A DNA stretch of 64,000 bases. Source: Mustelus asterias. Lineage: Eukaryota. The notes under the pieces were generated by a model. The model searched no databases, had not been told where the DNA came from, and was given only the letters and a program-made list of their open reading frames with translations. The translations under genes were made by a program, and so were the position numbers. This document shows, piece after piece, positions 7,222 through 63,807 of the stretch; the stretch's first letter is position 1; each line of letters opens with the position of its first letter. The stretch covers positions 11,036,001-11,100,000 of the forward strand of contig NC_135830.1 of NCBI RefSeq assembly GCF_964213995.1. The letters are read 5' to 3'.

Positions 7222-7417
7222 GGCGTCACTCCTCAGCCTTCTCTGTGCCAAGCGAAAACGCCCTAATTATCCAGTCTCAGCATTCGGTAAATTCATGGAG
7301 AAACTCACATAGGGTTAAGAGATAGAAAAAATGCGGGTCTAATCGAATGGCTCAGCAGGTTGGAGGAGTTCCCTCTGTTGGATTCTGATCATTTCCTTTT
7401 ATTTATTAAATTTTCAG

Positions 7418-7729
7418 AGGCGAAAGGCCCGGTGGAGCCTAAATTGAGCGTCTTTTACCCGCCAGTGCCACGGGGAGCCACCGGCATCGACACAGCTGCA
7501 GTATGCTTGGCCTCGGACTTCTCGCCCAACGCAATCATGCTCTCCCTGTACACGGGATCGGGCCAGGAGGTCAATGTGACAAGATCCAGTGTCCTATTGG
7601 AGAGCGGGAATTACAGGAGCTCGGGTTTTCTCTCTTTCCGCCAATCCGAGAAATCGCCAAACATCACGTGCAAGGCATTTCACGATAATCGAAATTACTC
7701 AGTAAACATCCCGCCCACAGTTGAAATTG
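7418..7729 (+). CDS. TRDC: TCR delta constant region exon 1 (Ig C1 domain)
   Basis: Acceptor TTTTCAG (phase 1), donor GTAAGT at 7730. Reads AKGPVEPKLSVFYPP...AAVCLASDFSP...SSVLLESGNYRSSGFL...NITCKAFHDNRNYS. The SGxY and TCxxxHDN motifs resemble C-delta rather than C-alpha. Confidence 0.9.
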
Positions 7730-8517
7730 GTAAGTTTATTTTATTTTCGTTCACGTGATGTGGGTGTCGTTGGCTTGGCCAACATTTATTGCCCGTCCTA
7801 AACTGCCCTTCAGCAGAAGACATTTAAGAGTCACTTGCCGGCCAGACCATGTAAGGACGGCAGATTTCGTTCGCTGAAGGAAGTTAGTGAACCAGATGAG
7901 TTTTAATGATAATCGACAATGGTTTCAGGGTCATCATGAAACTTTTAATTCCAATTTTTAAAAAAATGTTCAAATTTCGCAGCTGCCATCCCCAGGTCAG
8001 CATTCTGGGTCGTTGGATTACCAGTCCAGTGACAATGCCACTGCGCCACTGCCTCCTCTCAGAATGTTTTATGACAGGAAGAACTTGCACTAAATATTAT
8101 CCATCCTCTTAACGACCTAAGGACTCTCGGTGTCATCGTCACTCAAAGTGTAGTCTTTTTGAAAGATTAGCTGACTAATGATTGACGGTCAATTATCCTA
8201 GTCTGGGGACTTCACTGCAGGAGTTCCTCAGTGTCTCAGGCCTAACCAGCTTCAGTTGCTTCATCAATCACCTTCAATCCATTGTAAGGTCAGAAGTTGG
8301 GATGTTCGCTGATGACTGAACAATTTTCAGCACCATTCATGACACCTCAGATCTTGAAGTAGTGCATTACAAATGCACCAATAGCTGGACAATACCGAGG
8401 CTTTGACTGACAAGCTGCAAGTAACATTTGCGCCACACATGTTCCAGGCAATGACCAACTCCAACAGGAAAGAAGCTAACAACCGGCTCTTGACATTTAA
8501 TGGCATTACCATGACTG

Positions 8518-10513: not shown

Positions 10514-10955
10514 GTATGTGCTTTATTCAACATTTATCAAAGTAAAATACTTGCAAATAGACGGATTGATAAGTGGACAAATAGGCACGGATACAGACCC
10601 GGAGATTGAATGATAAACATATAGTGAGATGGGGAAAAAGATAGATTGTCACACAGAGTGAGGGAGAGAGATATATCAATCGAGCGGGATAGCGAGAGAG
10701 GAGGAGAGGCGGGGAGAGAGAGAGAAACTCAGAGTGAAAGAGAGGTGAAGATAGATAGACAGGCAAGCAGACGGTCGGACGGACGGACTGACAGAGATGG
10801 ACAGACGGACGGACGGACAGGGATGGACAGACGGACGAAAGTCAAGCTGTTAGATAATGGAAAAAATATCACATTAGAGGTATACAGTTGTTTTTCAATA
10901 CCAAATCACATATCCATTAAACCAGATCTATCATTTGTTTCTCTTATTTTGGCAG

Positions 10956-11066
10956 ATCGACTGAGGGTGAACTTTTTGTCTTTGACGGTGATGGGGCTAA
11001 GAATTTTGTTTTTCAAGAGCATTGTCTTCAATGTCATGATGACGGCCAGGGTGTGGCTATTTTGAG
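10956..11066 (+). CDS. TRDC: TCR delta constant exon 3 (transmembrane/cytoplasmic, stop codon)
   Basis: Acceptor TTTTGGCAG. Reads DRLRVNFLSLTVMGLRILFFKSIVFNVMMTARVWLF*, with the alpha/delta-type intramembrane Arg and Lys. Donor GTAAGG follows one base after the stop. Confidence 0.93.
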
Positions 11067-12924: not shown

Positions 12925-15900
12925 CTCATAGCAGGAAGGGCTTGGCTCTTAGTGAGCAATTAATGGAGGGGTCACCTGTGGTTGTCCCCCTCCAAAACAA
13001 GTATATTGCTTTGGATAGTGTGGAGGAGGATGACTCTCCAGGGGTAAGCCACAGTGACCAGGTCACTGGCACAGAATCAGGTTCTGTGGCCCGGAAAGGA
13101 AAGAGAGGAATTCGGAGAGCAATAGTGGTGGGGGATGCGTCGGTTCGAGGCACGGATAGGCGATTCTGTGGGTGCGAACGGGACTCCAGGATGGTAGTCT
13201 GCCTACCTGGTGTTGGGGTACTGGATGTCTCCGAGCGGATAGGAGGCATATTAAAAGGGGAAGATAAAGAAACGGATGTCGTTGTACACATTGGTGCAAA
13301 TGACGTAGATATGAAGAGCAGGGGGATCGTACGAGAGCAATTCAGGGAGTTGGGAAATAGGCGAAAAGGTAGGGCCTCCAGGGGAGCAAGAGCTGGGCTG
13401 CTCCCAATGTCTCGTGCCAGTGAGGCTAGGAATAGGGAGTTAATACAATTGAACGCTTGGCTAAAGGACTGGTCCAGGAGGGAGGGCTTCATTTTCCTGG
13501 ATCATTGGGAAGTTTTCAAGAGAGGATGGCACCTGTACAAGAAGGATGGGTCACAACTAAATTGGAAGGGCACGAATATCCTGGCTGGGAGTTTTGCTCG
13601 TGCAGTTCGGGTGGGTTTAAACTAATATGGCAGGGGGGTGGGGATCAAAAAATTAGGTCTACAAGTGTAGAGGCTGGGGACGAGCTTGGGGCCAGGACAA
13701 GGCTGGCAAAGAAGAAGAGCACTCTGGGGGAGGATGAACTCACTGGGCCTGGAGGTCTGGAGTGCCTCTACTTCAAAGCAAGGAGCGTAGCAGGTAAGAC
13801 AGACGAACTTAGGGCCTTCATGCTTACGAAGAATTTGGATGTAGTTGCGGTGACAGAGACTTGGTTGAAAGAGAGACAGGACTGGCAGCTGAATATTCCG
13901 GGGTACAAGTGTTTTAGGCGAGACAGAGGAGGGGCCAAAAGAGGTGGGGGAGTAGCAGTATTCGTTAGAGAACATATTACAGCGGTGCAGAGGGAGGACA
14001 ATTCAGAGGGGTCGTGTAACGAGTCACTGTGGGTGGAGCTCAGAAACAGGAAGGGCGCAGTCACTATGTTGGGGATATACTACAGGCCCTCCAACAGCCC
14101 AAGGGAAGTGGAAGAACGGATATGTCAGGAGATACTGGATAGGTGCAGGAAAAAATAGGGTTGTTGCAGTGGGAGACTTCAATTTCCCTGGTATAGAATG
14201 GAAATCGCTTAGAGCTGGGACTCTGAATGGGGAGGAATTTGTAAAATGCGTACAGGAAGGTTCTTTGGAACAATATGTAGATAGCCCGACTAGAGAGGGG
14301 GCTATACTGGACCTAGTACTGGGGAATGAGCCCGGTCAGGTCTTCAAAGTTTCAGTAGGGGAACATGTGGCAAATAGTGACCACAATTCTGTTAGCTTTA
14401 GGATAGCGATGGAAAAGGATGAGTGGTGTCCCAAGGGTAAGGTGTTGAATTGGGGGAAGGCTAACTTTAGTGGGATTAGGCAGAAATTGGCAGTTGTTGA
14501 TTGGGAGAGGCTGTTTGAGGGTAAATCCACAACTGGCATGTGGGAGTCTTTTAAGGAACAGTTGTTAGGGCTGCAGGACAGGCATGTGCCTGTAAAAAAG
14601 AAGGATAGGAAGGGTAGGATTCGAGAACCGTGGATAAACAGGGAAATTGAGGGACTGGTCAAAAAGAAAAGGGAGGCGTACGTTAGGTCCAGGCAGTTAA
14701 AAACGGAGGGAGCTCTGGAGGAATACAAAGAAAGTCGGAAAGAACTCAAAAGAGGAATTAGAAGGGCAAAAAGGGGTCACGAAATGTTCTTGGCAGACAG
14801 GATTAAGGAGAATCCCAAGGCATTTTATTCATACGTTAGGAACAAAAGGGGTGTCAGGGAAAAAATCAGACCTCTCAGGGACAAAAGTGGGGAATTATGC
14901 TCAGAGCCCAAAGAAGTAGGGGAGATCCTAAATGAATACTTTGCGTTGGTATTCACAAAGGAGAGGGATGTGTTGACTGGGAGTGTCTCGGAGGGGAGTG
15001 TTGAACCATTAGAGAAAATCTCCATTACAAGGGAGGAAGTGTTAGGTTTTTTAGAGAATATAAAGACTGACAAGTCCCCAGGGCCTGATGGAATCTATCC
15101 AAGGCTGCTCAGGGAGACGAGAGATAAAATCGCTGGGCCTCTGACGCAAATCTTTATCTCATCACTGGACACAGGTGAGGTCCCAGAGGATTGGAGGATA
15201 GCTAATGTGGTCCCGTTATTTAAGAAGGGTAGGAAGGATAACCCGGGTAATTATAGGCCGGTGAGCTTGACGTCCATGGTAGGGAAGTTGTTGGAGAGAA
15301 TTCTTAGAGATAGGATGTATGCACATTTAGAAAGGAATAAACTCATTAACGATAGTCAGCATGGTTTTGTGAGAAGGAGGTCATGCCTCACTAACCTGGT
15401 GGAGTTTTTTGAAGAAGTGACTAGAATGGTTGACGAGGGAAGGGCCGTGGATGTCGTCTCTATGGACTTTAGTAAAGCGTTTGACAAAGTCCCTCACGGT
15501 AGGCTGGTGCAAAAGGTTGGATCTCATGGGATAAAGGGGGAGGTGGCTAGATGGGTGGAGAACTGGCTTGTCACAGAAGACAGAGGGTGGGAGTGGAAGG
15601 GTCTTTTACCGGCTGGAGGCCTGTGACGAGTGGTGTTCCGCAGGGCTCTGTATTGGGACCTCTGCTGTTTGTGATTTACATAAACGATCTGGAAGAAGAT
15701 GTAACTGGGGTGATCAGTAAGTTTGCGGACGACACGAAATTGGCTGGAATTGGCGATAGTGAGGAACATTGTCAGAGACTACAGATGGATATAGATCGGC
15801 TGGAAATTTGGGCAAAGAAATGGCAGATGGAGTTCAAACCAGATCAATGCGAAGTGATGCATTTTGGTAGAGCTAATGTAGGGGGGAGCAATGCGATAAA

Positions 15901-16630
15901 TGGCAGAATCATAAAGGGTGTAGATACGCAGAGGGACCTGGGTGTGCAATTCCACAGATCCTTGAAGGTGACGTCACAGGTGGAGAAGGTGGTGAAAAAG
16001 GCATATGGCATGCTAGCCTTTATAGGACGGGGTATAGAGTATAAAGGTTGGGATCTGATGTTGCAGATGCATAGAACGTTGGTTCGGCCGCATTTGGAAT
16101 ACTGCATCCAGTTCTGGTCGCCACACTACCAGAAGGACTTGGAGGCTTTAGAGAGAGTGCAGAGGAGGTTTACCAGGATGTTGCCTGGTTTGGAGGGGCT
16201 TAGTTATGAGGAGAGATTGAGTAAACTGGGGTTGTTTTCACTGGAAAGACGGAGGATGAGGGGAGACCTAATAGAGGTGTATAAAATTATGAAAGACATA
16301 GATAGGGTGAACGGTGGGAAGCTTTTTCCCAGGCCGGTGGTGACGTTCACGAGGGGTCATAGGTTCAAGGTGAGAGGCGGGGGGGAGGTTTAACATGGAT
16401 ATCAGAAGGACATATTTTACACAGAGGGTGGTGGGGGCCTGGAATGCGCTGCCAGGCAAGGTGGTGGAGGTGGGCACACTGGGAACGTTTAAGACTTATC
16501 TCGATAGCCACATGAACGGAGTGGGTATGGAGGGATACAAAAGAATGGTCTAGTTTGGACCAGGGAGCGGCGGGGGCTTGGAGGGCCGAAGGGCCTCTTC
16601 CTGTACCGTATTGTTCTTTGTTCTTTGTTG
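12925..16630 (+). mobile_element. CR1 LINE, partial ORF1 (SGNH/GDSL esterase) plus frameshifted ORF2 (APE+RT)
   Basis: ORF1 12942-13625 (VVGDA, HIGAND). ORF2 pieces 13457-14158, 14169-15626 and 15551-16393 (TETW, GDFNFP, SDH, FADD). (TTCTTTG)n tail. Confidence 0.95.
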
Positions 16631-47459: not shown

Positions 47460-47498
47460 AGTTTCTGTACGGGGCCTGTATCAGTTTGTATCACGGTG
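47460..47498 (-). other. 23-RSS of the inverted V
   Basis: CACCGTG + 23 nt + ACAGAAACT on the - strand. Confidence 0.88.
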
Positions 47499-47806
47499 AA
47501 TGTTCAGCGCACAATAATACATGCCACTGTCACTCAGCTGTGCATCTGTCAGAGTTAAACTGTAGAAACGATTCGATGCTTGTAGTGTTGAAGATAATCG
47601 GCCTCCCACACGCCCAGCTTTCTCTGTTTCTCCTTCCGAATTCCTTCTGGTTAAAAAAAACAGCTCCTCCCCCGGTTTTTGTCGGTACCAGAGCAGGTCA
47701 TAGCGGCGGCTGTCTGTGGAAAACGAACAGGGCAACACCATGCGTTCTTCCTCCAAACATGATACCGATGATGCAAGCTGTTTAACAGCATCAGAATAAC
47801 ACAGTC
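47499..47806 (-). CDS. TCR alpha/delta V exon, open frame, inverted relative to C-delta
   Basis: Acceptor TTTGAAG (phase 1). Reads SDAVKQLASSVSCLEEERMVLPCSFSTDSRRYDLLWYRQKPG...LSDSGMYYCALNI. Confidence 0.92.
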
Positions 47807-50910: not shown

Positions 50911-51277
50911 AAATGTTGTGGGGAAAAAAGCACGATTAGGCTGAGTGGATGATCAGCCATGACCGTAATGAATGGCAGAGCATGCTCGAAGAGCCAAGTG
51001 GTCTCCTCCTGCTCCTATCATCAATGCCTCTCTGATTCATAGCCGTGTCCCCAGATTGTTACTTGGATTACTAAACCTCTGGATTTCTAATCCAGTGATA
51101 ATACCTTTATGCCGCCGTCTCCCCAACTACAGTGAATAAATGTCGAACACCCTTCAATGAAACACTTACAGCAAAATGGCCAGCTATGGACGCGATTATG
51201 TTTCCCCGGGAAAACTAACATGCAAGGCAGGTAAAAGCATCACAGAAATATTTTGTATTATTTTATAGGTTCTGCAG

Positions 51278-51629
51278 AATCTGGTTTATCTGTGTCACAG
51301 AATCCATCTCTCCAAACCTCTACTGCTAAAGACACCATTACTTTAAACTTTGAATATCCGGGATTTTGACAACACGCACTCCACTGGTACCGTCACTCCC
51401 CAAGACAGACCCCAAAATACCTGCTTAAGAGACACACATCAGGCGAGGCGAGCAAAGAAAACGCTACGGGGGGGGGGGGGGGGAGAATTTCTGCTTCTGT
51501 CGATCCCCTTGAAAAAATCAGCCGGTTAACGATCTCCAAACTGCAACTGAGTGACTCCGCTGTGTATTACTGTGCACTGAGTGGGCGCACAGCAGTGATG
51601 CAGAACACGGTGAGAGCTGTACAGAAACC
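51278..51629 (+). pseudogene. NAR-TCR supporting V-delta paralogue, pseudogene, with defective 23-RSS
   Basis: SGLSVSQNPSLQTSTAKDTITLNFEYPGF*QHALHWYRHSP...LQLSDSAVYYCALSGRT. Cys23 is TTT (51349-51351), the CDR1 Cys position is TGA (51367-51369), and there is a G16 run. The RSS is AGCAGTG + 23 nt + ACAGAAACC. Confidence 0.85.
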
Positions 51630-51675: not shown

Positions 51676-51836
51676 GGTTTTTGTACAGCTCTCTCCGTGT
51701 TCTGTATCACCGTGTCTGTAATTCTCACCATGTTCAGGTTTTTGAACAAATCTCTCCGTGTTCTGCATCACCGTGACTGTAATTCTCACCATGTTCAGGT
51801 TTTTGAACAAATCTCTCCGTGTTCTGTATCAGTGTG
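51676..51836 (-). repeat. Three tandem 23-RSSs (61-bp period)
   Basis: 51798-51836 CACACTG/23/TCAAAAACC; 51737-51775 CACGGTG/23/TCAAAAACC; 51676-51714 CACGGTG/23/ACAAAAACC. Confidence 0.93.
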
Positions 51837-52142
51837 CTGTGCGCTCACTCAGTTCACAGTAATACACAGCGGAGTCGCTCAATTGTAGTTTGAAGATCTC
51901 TAACCGGTTGCTTTTGACTGACGAATGGGTAGAAACAGAAATTCCGTCCCCGGCAACCTGTTTCTTATTATCCTCTCCTGAAGTGTGTGTCTGAAGGAGG
52001 TATTTCGGAGCCTGTCCTGGGGATTGACGGTACCAGTGTACTGTATATTGACAGTTCCCTGAATATTCACAGCTTAAAGTAACCGTGTCACCTGCGGCAG
52101 ACGTTTGGAGAGGTGAACTCGGTGACACAGTTGAGCTGGAAT
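51837..52142 (-). CDS. NAR-TCR supporting V-delta (leaderless, CDR1 Cys), open frame
   Basis: Acceptor TCCTGCAG (phase 1). Reads SSSTVSPSSPLQTSAAGDTVTLSCEYSGNCQYTVHWYRQSPGQAPKYLL...LSDSAVYYCELSERT. Extra Cys at 52051-52053. No leader exon was found between it and the J at 58977. Confidence 0.85.
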
Positions 52143-54338: not shown

Positions 54339-57300
54339 GAACAAAGAACAAAGAACAATACAGCATAGAAACAGGCCCTTCGGCCCTCCAAGCCCGTGCC
54401 TCTCCCTGGTCCAAACTAGATCATTCTTTTGTATCCCTCCATTCCCACTCCGTTCATATGGCTGTCTAGATAAGTCTTAAACGTTCCCAGTGTGTCCGCC
54501 TCCACCACCTTGCCTGGCAGCACATTCCAGGCCCCCACCACCCTCTGTGTAAAATATGTCCTTCTGATATCTGCGTTAAACCTCCCCCCCTTCACCTTGA
54601 ACCTATGACCCCTCGTGAACGTCACCACCGACCTGGAGAAAAGCTTCCCACCGTTCACCCTATCTATGCCTTTCATAATTTTATACATCTCTATTAAGTC
54701 TCCCCTCATTCTCCGTCTTTCCAGGGAGAACAACCCCAGTTTACCCAATCTCTCCTCATAACTAAGCCCCTCCATACCAGGCAACATCCTGGTAAACCTC
54801 CTCTGTACTCTCTCCAAAGCCTCCACGTCCTTCTGGTAGTGTGGCGACCAGAACTGGGCGCAGTATTCCAAATGCGGCCGAACCAACGTTCTATGCATCT
54901 GCAACATCAGACCCCAACTTTTATACTCTATGCCCCGTCCTTTAAAGGCAAGCATGCCATATGCCTTCTTCACCACCTTCTCCATCTGTGACGTCACCTT
55001 CAAGGATCTGTGGACTTGCATACCCAGGTCCCTCTGCGTATCTACACCCTTTATGGTTCTGCCACTTATCGTATAGCTCCTCCCTACATTATTTCTACCA
55101 AAATGCATCACTTCGCATTTATCAGGATTGAACTCCATCTGCCATTTCTTTGCCCAAATTTCCAGCCTATCTAGAACCTTCTGTACCTTCTGACAATGCT
55201 CCTCACTATCTGCAAGTCCAGCCAATTTTGTGTCGTCCGCAAACTTACTGATCACCCCAGTTACACCTTCTTCTAGATCGTTTATATAAATCACAAACAG
55301 CAGAGGTCCCAATACAGAACCCTGCGGAACACCACTAGTCACAGGCATCCAGCCGGAAGAAGACCCCTCCACTACCACCCTCTGTCTTCTGTGACCAAGC
55401 CAGTTCTCCACCCATCTAGCCACCTCCCACTTTATCCCATGAGATCCAACCTTTTTCACCAGCCTTCCATGGGGGACTTTGTCAAACGCTTTACTAAAGT
55501 CCATATAGACGACATCCACGGCCCTTCCCTCGTCAACCATTCTGGTCACTTCTTCAAAAAACTCCACCAGGTTAGTGAGGCATGACCTCCCTCTCACAAA
55601 ACCATGCTGACTATCGTTAATGAGTTTATTTATTTCTAAATGCGCATACATCCTATCTCTAAGAATCTTCTCCAACAACTTCCCCACCACGGACGTCAAG
55701 CTCACCGGCCTATAATTACCCGGGTTATCCTTCCTACCCTTCTTAAATAACGGGACCACATTAGCTATCCTCCAATCCTCTGGGACCTCACCTGCGTCCA
55801 GTGACGAGACAAAGATTTGCGTCAGAGGCCCAGCGATTTCATCTCTCGTCTCCCTGAGCAGCCTTGGATAGATTCCATCAGGCCCTGGGGATTTGTCAGT
55901 CTTTATATTCTCTAACAAACCTAACACTTCCTCCCTTGTAATGGAGATTTTCTCCAATGGTTCAACACTCCCCTCCGAGACACTCCCAGTCAACACATCC
56001 CTCTCCTTTGTGAATACCGACGCAAAGTATTCATTTAGGATCTCCCCTACTGCTTTGGGCTCCAAGCATAATTCCCCACTATCGTCCCTGAGAGGTCCGA
56101 TTTTTTCCCTGACAACCCTTTTGTTCTTAACATATGAATAAAATGCCTTTGGATTCTCCTTAATCCTGTCTGCCAAGGACGTTTCGTGACCCTTTTTTGC
56201 CCTTCTAATTCCCCGTTTGAGTTCTTTCCTACTTTCTTTGTACTCCTTCAGAGCTCCCTCCGTTTTTAGCTGCCTGGACCTAACATACGCCTCTCTTTTC
56301 TTTTTGACCAGTCCCTCAATTTCCCTGGTTATCCACGGTTCTCGAATCCTACCCTTCCTATCCTTCTTTTTTACAGGCACATGCCTATCCTGCAGCCCTA
56401 ACAACTGTTCCTTAAAAGACTCCCAAATGCCAGATGTGGATTTACCCTCAAACATCCTCTCCCAATCAAGAGCTGCCAATTTCTGCCTAATCCCACTAAA
56501 GTTAGCCTTCCCCCAATCCAACACCTTACCCTTGGGACACCACTCATCCTTTTCCATCACTCTCCTAAAGCTAACAGAATTGTGGTCACTATTTGCCACA
56601 TGTTCCCCTACCGAAACTTTGAAGACCTGACCGGGCTCATTCCCCAGTACTAGATCCAGTATAGCCCCGTCTCTCGTCGGGCTATCTACATATTGTTCCA
56701 AAGAACCCTCCTGTACGCATTTTACAAATTCCTCCCCATTCAGAGTCCCAGCTCTCAGCGATTTCCAGTCTATACCAGGGAAATTGAAGTCTCCCACTAC
56801 AACAACCCTACTTTTCCTGCACCTATCCAGTATCTCCTGACATATCCGTTCTTCCACTTCCCTTGGGTTGTTGGGGGGCCTGTAGTACACCCCCAACACC
56901 TCAAACTACCTCAAGTCACATGAGCAGCCTGGGAATGGAGGGATACAAACGAATGGTCTAGTTGGACCAAGGAGCGGCACAGGCTTGGAGGGCCGAAGGG
57001 CCTGTTTCCTGTGCTGTACTGTTCTTTGTTCTTTGTTAGTGACTGCGCCCTTCCTGTTCCTAAGCTCCACCCAGAGTGACTCGTTACACGACCCCTCTGA
57101 ATTGTCCTCGCTCTGCACCCCTGTAATATGCTCTCCAACTAATACTGCTACTCCCCCACCTCTTTTGGCCCCTTCTCTGTCTCGCCTAAAACGCTTGTAC
57201 CCCGGAATATTCAGCTGCCAGTCCTGTCCCTCTTTCAACCAAGTCTCCGTCACCACAATCACATCCAAATTCCTCGTGAGCATTAAGGCCCTAAGTTCGT

Positions 57301-58976: not shown

Positions 58977-59029
58977 GGGCTGTGACAGTCACTACCGCCT
59001 CAGACCCATCTGAAAATCTCCATTCACCC
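58977..59029 (-). CDS. NAR-TCR J segment (Ig-type, possibly decayed)
   Basis: GEWRFSDGSEAVVTVTA plus a phase-1 donor GTAAGT (58976-58971). It is directly preceded on the - strand by CACTGTG. Confidence 0.78.
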
Positions 59030-59068
59030 CACAGTGACAGAGCTCCCAGTCTGCCCAGCACAGGAATG
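59030..59068 (-). other. 23-RSS of the NAR-TCR J
   Basis: Read on +: CACAGTG (59030-59036) + 23 nt + ACAGGAATG (weak nonamer). Confidence 0.72.
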
Positions 59069-59228
59069 ACTGACACCTCAAACTACTGGGCAACCATTAC
59101 CGGACTGTCAGCTTTTCTCAATTATTCAGGGAATTTAGATCAATAATGAACTTGATTGTTTAAAAAAAACCTCATTGAATCAAACGGTGCCTTGTGACTT
59201 GCTGAGCTCCTGGAAAAATAGCCCAGGA

Positions 59229-62015
59229 ACAGAGACTTGGTTGAAAGAGGGACAGGAGTGGCAGCTGAATATTCCGGGGGACAAGTGTTTTAGGCGAGAC
59301 AGGGGAGGGGCCAAAAGAGGTGGGGGAGTAGCAGTATTAGTTCGAGGGCATATTACAGCGGTGGAGGGAGGGCAATTCAGAGGGGTCGTGTAATGAGTCA
59401 CTGTGGGTGGAGCTCAGAAACAGGAAGGGCGCAGTCACTATGTTGGGGGTATACTACAGGCCCCCGAACAGCCCAAGGGAAGTGGAAGAACGGATATGTC
59501 AGGAGATAATGGATAGGTGCAGGAAAAATAGGGTTGTTGTAGTGGGAGACTTCAATTTCCCTGGTATAGACTGGAATTCGCGTCGGGCTGGGACTCTCAA
59601 TGGGGAGGAATTTGTAAAATGCGTACAGGAGGGTTCTTTGGAACAATATGTAGATAGCCCGACTAGAGAGGGGGCTATACTGGACCTAATACTGGGGAAT
59701 AAGCCCGGTCAGGTCTTCAAAGTTTCGGTAGGGAAACATGTGGCAAACAGTGACCACAATTCTGTGAGCTTTAGGATAGTGATGGAAAAGGATGAGTGGT
59801 GTCCCAAGGGTAAGGTGTTGGATTGGGGGAAGGCTAACTTTAGTGGGATTAGACAGAAACTGGCAGCTGTTGATTGGGAGAGCCTGTTTGAGGGTAAATC
59901 CACATCTGGCATGTGGGAGTCTTTTAAGGAACAGTTGTTAGGGCTGCAGGATAGGCATGTGTCTGTAAAAAAGAAGGATAGGAAGGGTAAGATTCGAGAA
60001 CCGTGGATAACCAGGGAAATTGAGGGACTGGTCAAAAAGAAAAGAGAGCCGTATGTTAGGTCCAGGCAGCTAAAAACGGAAGGAGCTCTGGAGGAATACA
60101 AAGAAAGTAGGAAAGAACTCAAACGAGGAATTAGAAGGGCAAAAATGGGTCACGAAATGTCCTTGGCAGACAGGACTAAAGAGAATCCCAAGGCATTTTA
60201 TACATACGTTAGGAACAAAAGGGTTGTCAGGGATAAAAATCGGACCTCTCAGGGACAAAAGTGCGGAATTAGAGCCCAAAGAAGTAGGGGAGATCCTAAA
60301 TGAATACTTTGCGTCGGTATTCACAAAGGAGAGGGATGTGTTGACTGGGAGTGTCTCGGAGGGGAGTGCTGACCCGTTAGCGAAAATCTCCATAACAAGG
60401 GATGAAGCGTTAGGTTTTGTTAGCGAATATAAAGACGGACAAATCCCCAGGGCCTGATGGAATCTATCCAAGGCTGCTCAGGGAGACGAGAGATGGAATC
60501 GCTGGGCCTCTGACGCAAATCTTTGTCTCGTCACTGGACACAGGTGAGGTCCCAGAGGATTGGAGGATAGCTAATGTGGTCCCGTTATTTAAGAAGGGTA
60601 GGAAGGATAACCCGGGTAATTATAGGCCGGTGAGCTTGACGTCCGTGGTGGGGAAGTTGTTGGAGAAGATTCTTAGAGATAGGATGTATGCGCATTTAGA
60701 AATAAATAAACTCATTAACGATAGTCAGCATGGTTTTGTGAGAGGGAGGTCATGCCTCACTAACCTGGTGGAGGTTTTTGAAGAAGTGACCAGAATGGTT
60801 GACGAGGGAAGGGCCGTGGATGTCGTCTATATGGACTTTAGTAAAGCGTTTGACAAAGTCCCTCATGGTAGGCTGGTGAAAAAGGTTGGATGTCATGGGA
60901 TGAAGGGGGAGGTGGCTGAATGCGTGGAGAACTAGCTTGGTCACAGAAGACAGAGGGTGGTAGTGGAAGGGTCTTTTTCCGGCTGGATGCCTGTGACTAG
61001 TGGTGTTCCGCAGGGCTCCGTGTTGAGACCTCTGCTGTTTGTGATCTATATAAACGATCTGGAAGAAGGTGTAACTGGGGTGATCAGTAAGTTTGTGGAC
61101 GACACGAAAATGGCTGGACTTGCAGATAGTGAGGAACATTGTCAGAGGCTACAGAAGGATCGAGATAGGCTGGAAATCTGAGCAAAGAAATGGCAGATGG
61201 AGTTCAATCCAGATTAATGCGAAGTGATGCATTTTGCCGAACTAACGTAGGGGGGAGCTATACGATAAATGGCAGAACCATAAAGGGTGTAGATACGCAG
61301 AGGGACCTGGGTGTGCAAGTCCACAGATCCTTGAAGGTGACGTCACAGGTGGAGAAGGTAGTGAATAAGGCATATGGCATGCTTGCCTTTAAAGGACGGG
61401 GCATAGAGTATAAAAGTTGGGGTCTGATGTTGCAGTTGTACAGAACGTTGGTTCGGCCGTATTTGGAATACTGCGTCCAGTTCTGGTCGCCACACTACCA
61501 GAAGGACGTGGAGGCTTTTGAGAGAGTGCAGAGGTGGTTTACCAGGATGTTGCCTGGTATGGAAGGGCTTAGTTATGAGGAGCGATTGGGTAAACTGGGG
61601 TTGTTCTCACTGGAAAGACGGAGGATGAGGGGTGACCTAATAGAGGTGTATAAAATTATGAAACGAATAGATAGGGTGAACGGTGGGAAGCTCTTTCCCA
61701 GGTCGGTGGTGACGTTCAGGAGGGGTCATAGGTTCACGGTGAGGGGGGGGGGTGGGGGGGGGGGGTGCGGGGGATGGGAGGTTTAACACGGATATCAGAA
61801 GGACGTATTTTACACAGAGGGTGGTGGGGGCCTGGAATGCGCTGTCGGGCAAGTTGGTGGAGGCGGACACACTGGGAACGTTTAAGACTTATCTAGATAG
61901 CCACATGAACGGAGTGGGAATGGAGGGATACAAAAGAATGGTGTAGTTTGGACCATGGAGCGGCGCGGGCTTGGAGGGCCGAAGGGCCTGTTCCTGTGCT
62001 GTATTGTTCTTTGTT
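59229..62015 (+). mobile_element. CR1 LINE, 5'-truncated decayed ORF2, between NAR-TCR V and J
   Basis: ORF pieces 59407-61946 are near-identical to the 54.3-57.7 kb and 12.9-16.6 kb copies. TTCTTTGTT tail. Confidence 0.95.
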
Positions 62016-62191
62016 GGAACAGAGGCAGAGATGGAAGATTCTTATTAACGGCGAAAAATCTTGAAGAATTATAACTGATGGGAGGAAATTACAATGAAAT
62101 TAAACCAAATTGAAGTGGGAGTAACATCAACCCGAAAGGTCAAGTTACCGAACTTGGGAATTGCTGGGCATTACTTCTTCGATTGCCATGA

Positions 62192-62219
62192 GCTATTTGT
62201 TCTCCTCTCTTCCACTGCG
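62192..62219 (-). other. 12-RSS-like signal after the NAR-TCR V(D)
   Basis: - strand CGCAGTG + 12 nt (GAAGAGAGGAGA) + ACAAATAGC. The heptamer has one mismatch, inside the critical CAC. Confidence 0.65.
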
Positions 62220-62497
62220 GTATCCCATGTGTGTAGTTCCAGTTCTGAGCTTTGCAGTGTCTTCAACTCTCAAATCCCGATTTTCAAGTGAAAATGTCTT
62301 TTCTGCTTTGTTCACCGAGACAACAAATCTCCCTCCGCTGGAGATCCGCTCCCTGGTTGTCCCGGTCGGGGTTTTTCTAAAGAAATGGCCATTTTCGAAA
62401 TCATAAACTCCAGAGAAAACACAGATGATGGTGGGAGACTGACACTCCTTCCTGATCACCGCTGCCGGGCTCTGTGTCACTGACTGACTGAAACATC
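62220..62497 (-). pseudogene. IgNAR-like NAR-TCR V exon (FR1 Cys), pseudogene, probably germline-joined to D
   Basis: QSVTQSPAAVIRKECQSPTIICVFSGVYDFENGHFFRKTPTGTTRERISSGGRFVVSVNKAEKTFSLENRDLRVEDTA. It has the short CDR2-less VNAR-type core and an extra Cys at 62442-62444. The YYC region is deleted, causing a frameshift. Confidence 0.87.
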
Positions 62498-62645
62498 CTG
62501 GAAATTAAACACAGAGAGTTTATTGGACCACCAGAGCCGAACCATACAACGGCGTTAAAATCCTAGGCAGTGCCTGCAATAGGGATGGACTGGGGCAGCA
62601 CTTTATTCAATCCACAGGATGTGGGTTAATGTGATCGATACTCAC

Positions 62646-62684
62646 GGGTAAACAGATACACAGGGTGAAAACAAGGATTCCCAT
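62646..62684 (-). pseudogene. Leader exon of the NAR-TCR V
   Basis: MGILVFTLCICLP + GTGAGT. It is 39 nt (phase 0), which mismatches the phase-1 V acceptor, so it is probably damaged. Confidence 0.65.
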
Positions 62685-63319
62685 CGCTCTGCTGCCTGGA
62701 GATGATGATTCACATGACAGGGAGCTGGAGACTGCAGAGCTGGACTGCTTTGGGAGACTGGACATTAAAGCTGCACTGAAATTCTTCACACCCAAGCATC
62801 TGTAAATCAGGCCATGCCCACCGTTCAAATAAAGCTCAAGGATTTAAATGGGGATCCCAGATGTGAACTTTCAGTCAAAACGCCCGGGCAGCTAGAATCC
62901 AGAGATTCACCCCGCGACCGACAGTCGTGAATGCCATGCTCCACTTGCTCTCGACTTGATTATTTTTGTTATTAATTCAATGGATGTGGGCGATGCCAGC
63001 GAAACCTGACCAACTCGGCCCCCGGAAATGAATCTCAGACCTCAATAAAGCTACAGTTAAGCACGCTCTCTCGAGTATACTGACTGAGTGACTGATTTCA
63101 CTCGTCCATATTTAATCCTGTCTGCCAAAGAACTTCAGCTGTCCAGGGCCCTCATTTGAATCTGATTTAAATATCTGGCGGGTACATTAAGGATTGCGTC
63201 ACTGCCGGAAAACAAAGGAGAAGGAAGTGATTTTAACCAATTGAACCATGTGTGGGTCTTTGTCCTGTTTCGGGTTTGAAATTATAATCGAAAAGAGCGG
63301 TTCGGGCTCGGAAGCAGCC

Positions 63320-63365: not shown

Positions 63366-63454
63366 GTAAGGATGATTCCAATCATGTTCCATTCAGATTG
63401 GCGTTATATTTTATATTAACACGCGATTTTTTCTTGCTCCCAAACACATGACAG

Positions 63455-63768
63455 ATCAGAGTGATGGAGATTCAGTTACTCAGTCCCAGTCTTCAGAGAG
63501 CGGGAGAGAAGGGGAAACCGTGACTATAAAATGTACCTATCACACTACAGAAGAAATGTATTATGTCTATTGGTACCTGCAGCTACCAGCGAAGGAGCCC
63601 GAGTTTGTTGTGTGGAGACGGTCTTGGGATGTTGTGGAATGGAAAGGCTCGGCGTTAGGAAACCGTTTTGCTTCAGACCTCCAGCTGTCAGACTCCACCG
63701 CAAGTTTAACCATCATGGACTTGCAGACGACCAACGCTGCCATTTATTACTGCGCTCTCTCTGAGACT
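63455..63768 (+). CDS. TCR alpha/delta V exon, intact
   Basis: DQSDGDSVTQSQSSESGREGETVTIKCTYHTTEEMYYVYWYLQLPAKEPEF...NAAIYYCALSET. Confidence 0.93.
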
Positions 63769-63807
63769 CACAGTGATTGAAAAGAGTACCGACCCTGTAC
63801 AAAAACT
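63769..63807 (+). other. 23-RSS
   Basis: CACAGTG + 23 nt + ACAAAAACT. Confidence 0.95.

What the first reader, a model, noticed from the sequence alone, without database searches (positions are those of the whole stretch)
62192..62256. NAR-TCR V appears germline-joined to D, ending in a 12-RSS
Seen: after TGC AAA GCT (CKA) there is no V heptamer or 23-RSS. Instead, 28 extra nt (CAGAACTGGAACTACACACATGGGATAC; QNWNYTHGI, open) run into CGCAGTG/12/ACAAATAGC, which is 12/23-compatible with the J. I see no separate D between V and J. Established: germline-joined VD/VDJ genes occur in shark Ig clusters and are attributed to RAG activity in germ cells. Inference: a pre-joined V-D or V-D-D in a T-cell receptor cassette, with a partly hard-wired CDR3 and one remaining join. 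I do not know whether this has been reported for NAR-TCR.
Basis: partly seen in the sequence, partly recalled or inferred. Interest (0 to 1): 0.85.

Follow-up and report, generated by a model that had tools for sequence, protein, structure and literature searches.

The report
Decayed NAR-TCR V with 12-spacer signal
This is a broken copy of a shark NAR-TCR variable gene from a subfamily that carries about ten extra bases and a 12-spacer recombination signal where its relatives carry a 23-spacer signal, as if a D segment had been fused to it in the germline.

Summary
The letters are there, on the minus strand, but the reading needs three corrections.

1. TGC AAA GCT is out of frame with the V exon. 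Compared with intact relatives, 13 nt (the ATYY codons) are missing. The leader and V-exon splice phases do not match, the heptamer is CGCAGTG, and a 2.8-kb LINE lies between V and J. This copy is a pseudogene.

2. About 18 of the "28 extra nt" are native V coding. Seventeen relatives run 5 to 8 codons past the Cys and then straight into CACAGTG; three of them read on to a nonamer about 23 nt further. One ends ...YWYYT. Only about 10 nt (CATGGGATAC) are extra.

3. The 12-spacer signal is real for the subfamily. Paralogous contigs in this species and in a second species read CACAGTG at that place. It is the only 12-spacer match in the window (0.45 expected). The J has a 23-spacer signal, and no D lies between V and J. 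The same tail occurs in a Mustelus asterias gene model and in one ENA ORF.

A germline V-D join, old and copied many times, is the best explanation (about 0.55). No matching free D could be examined. This scan noted the same wiring at eight or more other places in this genome. No held paper reports it for NAR-TCR, and the primary papers were not readable.

The parts
62646..62684 (-). Leader exon (MGILVFTLCICLP), donor GTGAGT at 62645. It is 39 nt (phase 0); intact relatives need phase 1 (LP|R...).
   Evidence: Sequence read. Compared with P0003, P0029 and P0031 N-termini. The 1-nt shortfall is inferred from the protein models.
62230..62497 (-). NAR-TCR V exon, native coding up to ...AAC TAC ACA. 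It has the a-b loop Cys (KEC) and FFRK without Trp. A 13-nt gap relative to homologues lies at 62253-62256, so Cys104 is out of frame.
   Evidence: ORF. tblastn in two frames. 83% identity to P0031. Native V ends of relatives.
62220..62229 (-). Extra 10 nt, CATGGGATAC, between the family's normal V coding end and the 12-RSS heptamer. Putative D remnant.
   Evidence: P0080 ...CKARYWYYT|HSD (heptamer) versus P0002 ...CEAQYWYYT|HGTPQW and window ...NWNYT|HGIPQW. D origin is inferred, not shown.
62192..62219 (-). 12-spacer RSS: heptamer CGCAGTG (62219-62213), spacer (62212-62201), nonamer ACAAATAGC (62200-62192).
   Evidence: only 12-spacer hit, 0.45 expected. table 3: at 62218 paralogous contigs read the base that makes CACAGTG (X1 253.5 of 280.2 depth, 5 contigs; X5 136.3 of 136.3, 4 contigs).
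62225..62231 (-). Heptamer-like CACATGG at the position of the family's normal V heptamer, 24 nt from the same nonamer (nested signal).
   Evidence: scan. Position compared with H-S-D read-throughs.
62016..62191 (-). V-side part of the V-J spacer. No D-type RSS pair.
   Evidence: Homologous to the P0002 read-through flank. Covered by paralogous contigs in organisms A and B (records 3, 26, 27, 28).
59229..62015 (+). 5'-truncated CR1-like LINE inserted between V and J. GGAACAGAG is repeated at 59226-59234 and 62016-62024.
   Evidence: blastn to other copies in the window at 92-93% identity. The repeat was read.
59069..59228 (-). J-side part of the V-J spacer. No D-type RSS pair.
59030..59068 (-). 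J 23-spacer RSS: nonamer CATTCCTGT (5 of 9), 23-nt spacer, heptamer CACTGTG (59036-59030).
   Evidence: Sequence. P0003 reads this heptamer as 'SLW'.
58977..59029 (-). NAR-TCR J coding, (G)EWRFSDGSEAVVTVTA, donor GTAAGT from 58976. The second Gly of the G-x-G motif is Glu.
   Evidence: tblastn of P0003, sequence, J of P0029/P0031 RFTDGSGTVVTVSA.
51837..52142 (-). Leaderless supporting V-delta exon (acceptor cctgcag), Cys in CDR1 (CEYSGNCQY), open frame.
   Evidence: Pfam V-set 2.7e-16. Closest in sequence to the supporting V of P0059.
51676..51836 (-). Three tandem 23-spacer RSSs (61-bp period) behind the supporting V.

Best explanation
The stretch is the 3' end of a dead copy of a NAR-TCR V segment. 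It belongs to a subfamily whose V segments carry about 10 extra coding bases and a 12-spacer RSS, where other NAR-TCR V segments have a 23-spacer RSS directly after the same coding end.

The simplest origin is one RAG-type V-to-D coding join in an ancestral germline, starting from V-23 | 12-D-12 | 23-J. That join removes V's 23-RSS and D's 5' 12-RSS. It leaves V + D remnant + D's 3' 12-RSS facing the J's 23-RSS about 330 bp away, with no free D. The joined cassette was then duplicated and kept in several shark lineages.

In intact members, a single V(D)-to-J join would complete the NAR V exon. Its CDR3 would start with a hard-wired ...YWYYTHG(T/I). The J then splices (phase 1) to a leaderless supporting V-delta, which rearranges separately.

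In this copy that path is blocked:
- a 13-nt deletion puts Cys104 out of frame
- the leader and V splice phases disagree
- the heptamer is CGCAGTG
- the J has lost a Gly of G-x-G
- a 2.8-kb LINE separates V and J

Shown: the anatomy, the lesions, the 12-RSS in paralogues, the canonical V ends of relatives (with a 23-spacer in three), and presence at full genomic depth.
Inferred: that the 10 nt come from a D, and that RAG made the join.
For: - V family identity: leader, Cys in the a-b loop, no Trp in 'WYRK', and a linked leaderless V-delta with a CDR1 Cys. These match the features quoted in PMC1845163 (passages). Identity to the Mustelus asterias model P0031 is 83%.
- Canonical relatives: 17 proteins read 5-8 codons after Cys and then H-S-D or ...TQ*, which is CACAGTG (P0001, P0013, P0028, P0037, P0044, P0045, P0050, P0056, P0057, P0058, P0060, P0065, P0067, P0077, P0078, P0079, P0080). 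P0056, P0077 and P0080 read on to a nonamer about 22-23 nt later. P0080 ends CKARYWYYT|HSD, the same coding end as the extended P0002 (CEAQYWYYT|HGTPQW).
- Extended type: the window, P0002 and P0031.
- 12-RSS: unique in the window, 0.45 expected. Paralogous contigs in organism A and all 4 contigs of organism B read CACAGTG at 62218 (table 3).
- The J has a 23-spacer RSS. No RSS pair lies in the V-J flanks. The LINE is flanked by a 9-nt repeat, so nothing was lost there.
- Germline: exact contigs X1 record 1 (61990-62331) and X3 record 9 (61987-62349) show 0 differences. X1 exact contigs have uniform depth of 26.7, 26.4 and 27.3.
- Precedent: partly (VD-J) pre-joined shark Ig clusters (PMC4279169 passages), RAG-like germline joining (PMC2193156 abstract), and IgNAR type III D1-D2 fusion (PMC4622739 passage).
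Against: - No free D with a matching sequence was seen. No DNA of a split cassette could be read (look-up of encoding contigs closed).
- The first bases of the extra stretch (CA) equal the start of a heptamer. This is a mild coincidence under a clean coding join.
- The extended tail is not congruent with the V-body tree. P0002 sits in a starred clade with canonical-ended V segments, away from the window and P0031. This needs gene conversion, or reflects a poorly resolved 84-column tree.
- J segments of canonical-type and extended-type cassettes have the same length before DGSG (19 nt). The reciprocal 'DJ-joined' reading noted elsewhere in the scan therefore gains no support here.
- Among 78 other proteins examined, only 2 show the extended tail (one more begins alike and then departs).
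- There is no RNA evidence; no listed run is on record as RNA.
- Pfam finds no domain in the truncated 82-aa window V at E <= 0.01.
- That nurse-shark NAR-TCR has a D rests on a secondary quotation ('separate VDJ gene rearrangements') and on recall.
Confidence: 0.55

Rival explanations
1. RSS swap without a D. An ancestral D-less cassette (V-23 / 12-J) underwent a germline hybrid joint, which inverted the V-J spacer. This put the J's 12-RSS on V and V's 23-RSS on J. Under this reading the 10 extra nt are junctional additions, not D.
For: The result (V-12 / 23-J, no D, a few extra bases exactly at the V coding end) is the same as observed. Both cassette wirings are noted elsewhere in this genome by first readers (unchecked). 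J lengths do not differ between the two wirings.
Against: Ten added bases is long for a germline junction. Secondary sources describe NAR-TCR V domains as made by VDJ rearrangement. The orientation of the spacer was not tested.
Confidence: 0.2
2. The 12-RSS is fortuitous. The true signal is the V's own decayed 23/24-spacer RSS (CACATGG-24-ACAAATAGC), and the cassette simply lost its D.
For: CACATGG lies exactly where relatives have their heptamer and keeps CAC. Its spacing to the nonamer is 24. The copy is a pseudogene anyway.
Against: Paralogues and a second species have a perfect CACAGTG at the 12-spacer position. The same H-G-(T/I)-P-Q(-W) read-through is kept in P0002 and in Mustelus P0031. 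The J is 23-RSS, so a 24-RSS V could not join it. The 12-spacer match is unique in the window.
Confidence: 0.06
3. One reading: a private germline V-D or V-D-D join of 28 nt in a usable cassette with one join left.
For: The 12/23 logic and the absence of a D hold.
Against: 18 of the 28 nt are native V coding. The Cys is out of frame and the heptamer is CGC. The structure is shared by roughly ten paralogous copies by depth and by other species.
Confidence: 0.04
4. Somatic rearrangement or assembly artefact captured in the assembly.
For: The tissue of origin is unknown.
Against: The same sequence appears without a difference in contigs of two samples, at the same depth as the flanks. The same architecture occurs in other genes and species.
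Confidence: 0.02

Closest known systems
Partly germline-joined (VD-J) immunoglobulin clusters of sharks
   Same: V fused to D-derived bases. The remaining 3' signal faces the J, and one somatic join is left. The fusion is attributed to RAG activity in germ cells (PMC4279169 passages; PMC2193156 abstract).
   Different: Here the fusion is in a T-cell receptor delta-linked NAR-TCR cassette, not an Ig cluster. The D remnant is only about 10 nt and was not matched to a free D. The trait is old and multi-copy, and this copy is dead.
IgNAR type III cluster (germline D1-D2 fusion, nurse shark)
   Same: A NAR-type V system with a germline fusion that removes one rearrangement step and restricts CDR3. 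Joining differs between species (PMC4622739 passage).
   Different: That fusion is D-D in an Ig heavy-chain cluster. Here it is V-(D) in the TCR locus.
Marsupial TCR-mu germline-joined V (V-mu-j)
   Same: A three-domain TCR chain in which one V domain is pre-assembled in the germline (PMC3457774 passages).
   Different: In TCR-mu the supporting V is fully joined, probably by retrotransposition. Here the distal V is only partly joined and keeps an RSS.
Canonical NAR-TCR V segments (doubly rearranging NAR-TcR, Criscitiello et al. 2006)
   Same: Leader, a-b loop Cys, no Trp of WYRK, dedicated J spliced to a leaderless supporting V-delta with a CDR1 Cys (PMC1845163 passages).
   Different: Canonical members read straight from the coding end into CACAGTG (17 proteins), with a nonamer about 23 nt on in the three that read that far. 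This subfamily has +10 nt and a 12-spacer. The 2006 paper itself was not readable.

Membership tests
NAR-TCR V gene segment | Own leader exon and V exon | tested here: met
   ATG at 62684, donor at 62645, acceptor at 62499-62498. The splice phases do not match (inferred).
NAR-TCR V gene segment | Cys in the a-b loop and no canonical Trp of the WYRK motif | tested here: met
   ...RKECQSP... and ...GHFFRKTP.... Features as quoted in PMC1845163.
NAR-TCR V gene segment | Linked downstream J spliced to a leaderless supporting V-delta with a CDR1 Cys | tested here: met
   J at 59029-58977 with donor. Supporting V at 52142-51837 with acceptor and CEYSGNCQY.
NAR-TCR V gene segment | Sequence kinship to annotated NAR-TCR-type models | tested here: met
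   83% identity to P0031. Groups with P0029/P0031 at 84/81 support. 75 models found.
Functional V segment | Open frame through both canonical Cys residues | tested here: not met
   Cys104 is out of frame and 13 nt are missing. Pfam gives no hit for the 82-aa remnant.
Functional V segment | RSS heptamer beginning CAC | tested here: not met
   CGCAGTG in this copy; CACAGTG in paralogues.
Germline-joined VD segment | Split relatives with a V-23RSS at the same coding end | tested here: met
   17 read-through proteins reach a heptamer. P0080 has the same ...YWYYT end. A spacer of about 23 is seen in P0056, P0077 and P0080. This is protein-level evidence only.
Germline-joined VD segment | Extra coding bases followed by a 12-spacer RSS, and no free D before a 23-RSS J | tested here: met
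Germline-joined VD segment | Extra bases match the D of split cassettes, and the 3' flank matches DNA 3' of that D | not testable with these tools
Germline-joined VD segment | Present in germline (non-lymphoid) DNA of several animals | tested here: inconclusive
   Exact contigs appear in 2 of 3 samples laid for organism A, at flank-like depth. Tissues and individuals are not on record. In X4 only a paralogue covers 62218.

The most novel reading that the evidence does not exclude
A whole subfamily of NAR-TCR cassettes, conserved across at least two or three shark genera, was rewired by germline RAG activity from V-D-J to a one-step V(D)-12RSS / 23RSS-J design. This would give a semi-invariant, partly hard-wired CDR3 on a T-cell receptor. 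It would be the first germline-joined TCR segment in cartilaginous fish. It also carries a nested 12/24 double signal that could let the same V pair with either kind of partner.
Probability: 0.4. Interest if true: 0.7.

Novelty: new variant of a known kind. Interest (0 to 1): 0.5.

Why it matters
Germline joining by RAG is documented for shark immunoglobulin clusters and is used to argue that RAG still reshapes genomes. Finding the same process fixed, duplicated and conserved inside the TCR delta locus would extend it to T-cell receptors. It would predict a NAR-TCR subset with a restricted, inherited CDR3 start, which repertoire sequencing could test.

For annotation there are three practical points. 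NAR-TCR V segments natively run up to 8 codons past the Cys. Two signal types exist. RefSeq gene models of these loci splice out of and into RSS heptamers. This particular copy is a pseudogene and has no function of its own.

Tried and rejected
- Germline VDJ in basking shark, rejected. P0003 looked fully joined, but its 'SLW' is the J heptamer read through, so the model is a splicing artefact.
- Primary NAR-TCR papers were not held: Criscitiello 2006, Ott 2021, Deiss 2019, Criscitiello 2010. Whether they describe the D, its RSSs or any joined gene is unknown to me. Supplements were not consulted.
- Literature searches for a germline-joined NAR-TCR. I read passages in PMC12227049, PMC1845163, PMC3457774, PMC6795676, PMC5931798, PMC3149040, PMC4279169, PMC7615758, PMC2275272 and PMC4622739. 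None says it.
- Two first regexes for V bodies failed or missed rows. still missed 23 of 78 proteins, and I classed those by eye.
- A likeness between the J-RSS spacer (reverse strand) and the canonical V-RSS read-through, as a hybrid-joint test. It holds only with a gap that breaks the RSS geometry, so I dropped it.
- A shared 'KLS' after the nonamer in P0002 and P0080. Too short to mean anything.
- The motif TGGGAYAC also fits the start of basking-shark J segments (WWDT...). J lengths are equal, so it does not show a DJ join.
- A third protein search with P0002 added only P0079 and P0080.
- The search of protein representatives, structure prediction and RNA tools were not used because they do not bear on the question.

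Full report
WHAT IS THERE

The feature lies on the minus strand. A NAR-TCR V gene runs from a leader exon (62684-62646) through a 147-nt intron into a V exon that starts at 62497.

In the exon's frame the product is ...VTQSPAAVIRKECQSPTIICVFSGVYDFENGHFFRKTPTGTTRERISSGGRFVVSVNKAEKTFSLENRDLRVEDTAKLRTGTTHMGYRSGREENK*. It has the hallmarks of NAR-TCR V that PMC1845163 quotes from the original description (passages):
- its own leader
- a Cys in the a-b loop
- no Trp in the WYRK motif

Downstream on the same strand are two further parts:
- a J (coding 59029-58977, donor GTAAGT)
- a leaderless supporting V-delta (52142-51837) with a Cys in CDR1 and an acceptor site (Pfam V-set 2.7e-16)

A TCR constant exon and transmembrane exon lie on the plus strand at 7360-7758 and 10955-11062. 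The transmembrane exon is 36 of 36 residues identical to the Mustelus asterias model P0074, whose V part resembles the window's supporting V-delta. The cassette is therefore inverted relative to C.

THE OBSERVATION

- TGC 62256-62254
- 28 nt at 62247-62220
- CGCAGTG 62219-62213
- 12-nt spacer
- ACAAATAGC 62200-62192

With heptamer <=1 and nonamer <=2 mismatches, this is the only 12-spacer signal on either strand of the window. Simulations expect 0.45. The same thresholds find six 23-spacer signals, five of them just 3' of V-like coding sequence; I did not examine the sixth (41257).

THREE CORRECTIONS

First, the Cys codon is not in the exon's frame. tblastn of P0002 gives one HSP in the V frame that loses similarity after ...EDTA, and a second HSP (62259-62158) in another frame from the Cys on. 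Counting codons, 13 nt (the last base of the Ala codon, T-Y-Y, and the TGC overlap) are missing.

Second, most of the "28 extra nt" is ordinary V. Searches returned 80 proteins. They include 75 gene models or ORFs of the NAR-TCR type from Cetorhinus, Carcharodon, Heterodontus, Mustelus, Scyliorhinus, Pristiophorus, Rhincodon, Hemiscyllium, Stegostoma, Chiloscyllium, Pristis, Amblyraja and others.
- Seventeen read 5 to 8 codons beyond the Cys and then H-S-D or ...TQ-stop, which is CACAGTG read through.
- Three of these (P0056, P0077, P0080) read on to a nonamer about 22-23 nt later.
- P0080 of Chiloscyllium punctatum ends CKARYWYYT|HSDRPRLPVAQKL.
- P0002 ends CEAQYWYYT|HGTPQWNGEGQIPK.
- The window ends CKAQNWNYT|HGIPQWKRGEQIA.
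The native coding end is therefore at ...ACA (62230). Only CATGGGATAC (62229-62220) is extra.

Third, a heptamer-like CACATGG lies at the old heptamer position, 24 nt from the same nonamer.

IS THE 12-SPACER SIGNAL REAL?

Yes, for the subfamily. Contigs of four public runs were laid on 61950-62900 at 80% likeness.
- At 62218, paralogous contigs of the window's species (coded organism A) read the base that turns CGCAGTG into CACAGTG (253.5 of 280.2 depth, 5 contigs in X1).
- All four contigs of a second species (organism B) read the same.
- Contigs 85-90% alike cover the tail, signal and flank (62016-62243, and up to 62258) in both species.
- Summed depth over the tail is about ten times that of the exact contig. 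This is a rough sign of about ten similar copies.
- The V body is deeper still, so other copies end differently.

The Mustelus asterias model P0031 carries the same tail (CKAQHWYYAHGTPQ), and its V body is 83% identical to the window's.

The J has CACTGTG with a 23-nt spacer and a weak nonamer.

The spacer between the two signals holds no RSS pair. It is about 330 nt once the LINE is removed. The LINE occupies 59229-62015 and is flanked by GGAACAGAG on both sides.

GERMLINE STATUS

Exact contigs span the V end in two samples (X1 61990-62331; X3 61987-62349; 0 differences). They have the same depth as neighbouring exact contigs (26.7, 26.4, 27.3 in X1). In the third sample (X4) only a paralogue is listed over 62218. 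Tissues and individuals are not on record, and no run is on record as RNA.

THIS COPY IS DEAD

- The 13-nt deletion puts Cys104 out of frame.
- The leader exon is 39 nt (phase 0), whereas the acceptor used by relatives needs phase 1 (LP|R-C-F-S-Q; inferred).
- The heptamer starts CGC.
- The J reads DGSEA where 73 of the 75 models have a Gly or Thr-Gly pattern. One Heterodontus model also has E.
- A LINE lies between V and J.
- The Mustelus model whose supporting V best matches the window's (P0059) also has a damaged V end that reads through the nonamer.

EXPLANATION

The anatomy is what a germline V-to-D coding join would leave, starting from V-23 | 12-D-12 | 23-J. Partly joined VD-J clusters, and RAG-like joining in germ cells, are established for shark immunoglobulins. 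IgNAR type III has a D1-D2 fusion.

I could not test the key prediction, which is a free D matching the 10 nt. A germline hybrid joint that swapped the signals of a D-less cassette would give the same picture, so it is kept as the main rival.

Results against a simple story:
- P0002 carries the tail but sits in another V clade together with canonical-ended V segments.
- J lengths are the same in both wirings.
- Only 2 of 78 other proteins show the extended tail (P0059 begins alike, then departs).

EARLIER NOTES OF THIS SCAN

First readers noted the same wiring (V(D)-12RSS facing 23RSS-J, no free D) at eight or more other places in this genome, and the reverse wiring at two. These notes are unchecked. 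The depth data agree with several copies.

NOVELTY

Five full-text searches and passages from ten papers gave no report of a germline-joined NAR-TCR (and the paper-reading runs). The primary NAR-TCR papers and all supplements were not readable, so prior description cannot be excluded. I class this as a new variant of a known kind. This instance is ordinary (a pseudogene), while the subfamily trait is of moderate to good interest.

Noticed in passing
window 51676-51836 (-): Three complete 23-spacer RSSs in a 61-bp tandem repeat behind the supporting V-delta. First readers note longer arrays elsewhere in this genome.
   Followed up: partly
window 51271-51594 (+): A second supporting-V-delta-like exon with an in-frame stop, tail to tail with the first. 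It is closest to the supporting V of Mustelus P0029/P0031. No NAR V or J for it was found in the window.
   Followed up: partly
window 7360-7758 and 10955-11062 (+): TCR constant and transmembrane exons. The transmembrane exon is 36 of 36 identical to Mustelus asterias P0074. The NAR-TCR cassette lies 41-55 kb downstream in the opposite orientation, so its use would need inversion.
   Followed up: partly
window 59229-62015 (+): 5'-truncated CR1-like LINE, 92-93% identical to copies at 13853-16622 and 54347-56898. It is flanked by a 9-nt direct repeat, GGAACAGAG.
   Followed up: yes
proteins P0003, P0028, P0029, P0031 and others (RefSeq models): Automatic gene models of NAR-TCR loci splice from inside the V heptamer (GT of CACAGTG) to sites in or before the J heptamer. 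This produces false 'joined' proteins with motifs such as THSD, SLW and ITV.
   Followed up: partly
tree: The extended tail occurs on two different V-body lineages (window/P0031 versus P0002). This hints at gene conversion or exchange of 3' ends between cassettes.
   Followed up: no
window 63448-63807 (+) and 47460-47756 (-): Two ordinary TCR V segments with 23-spacer RSSs. The one at 63769 has a perfect heptamer and an 8 of 9 nonamer, and sits head to head with the NAR V.
   Followed up: no
window 62549-62674: Contigs in three runs of organism A skip 124 nt spanning part of the leader intron and leader. This is a paralogue or allele difference, not the intron (table 5).
   Followed up: no
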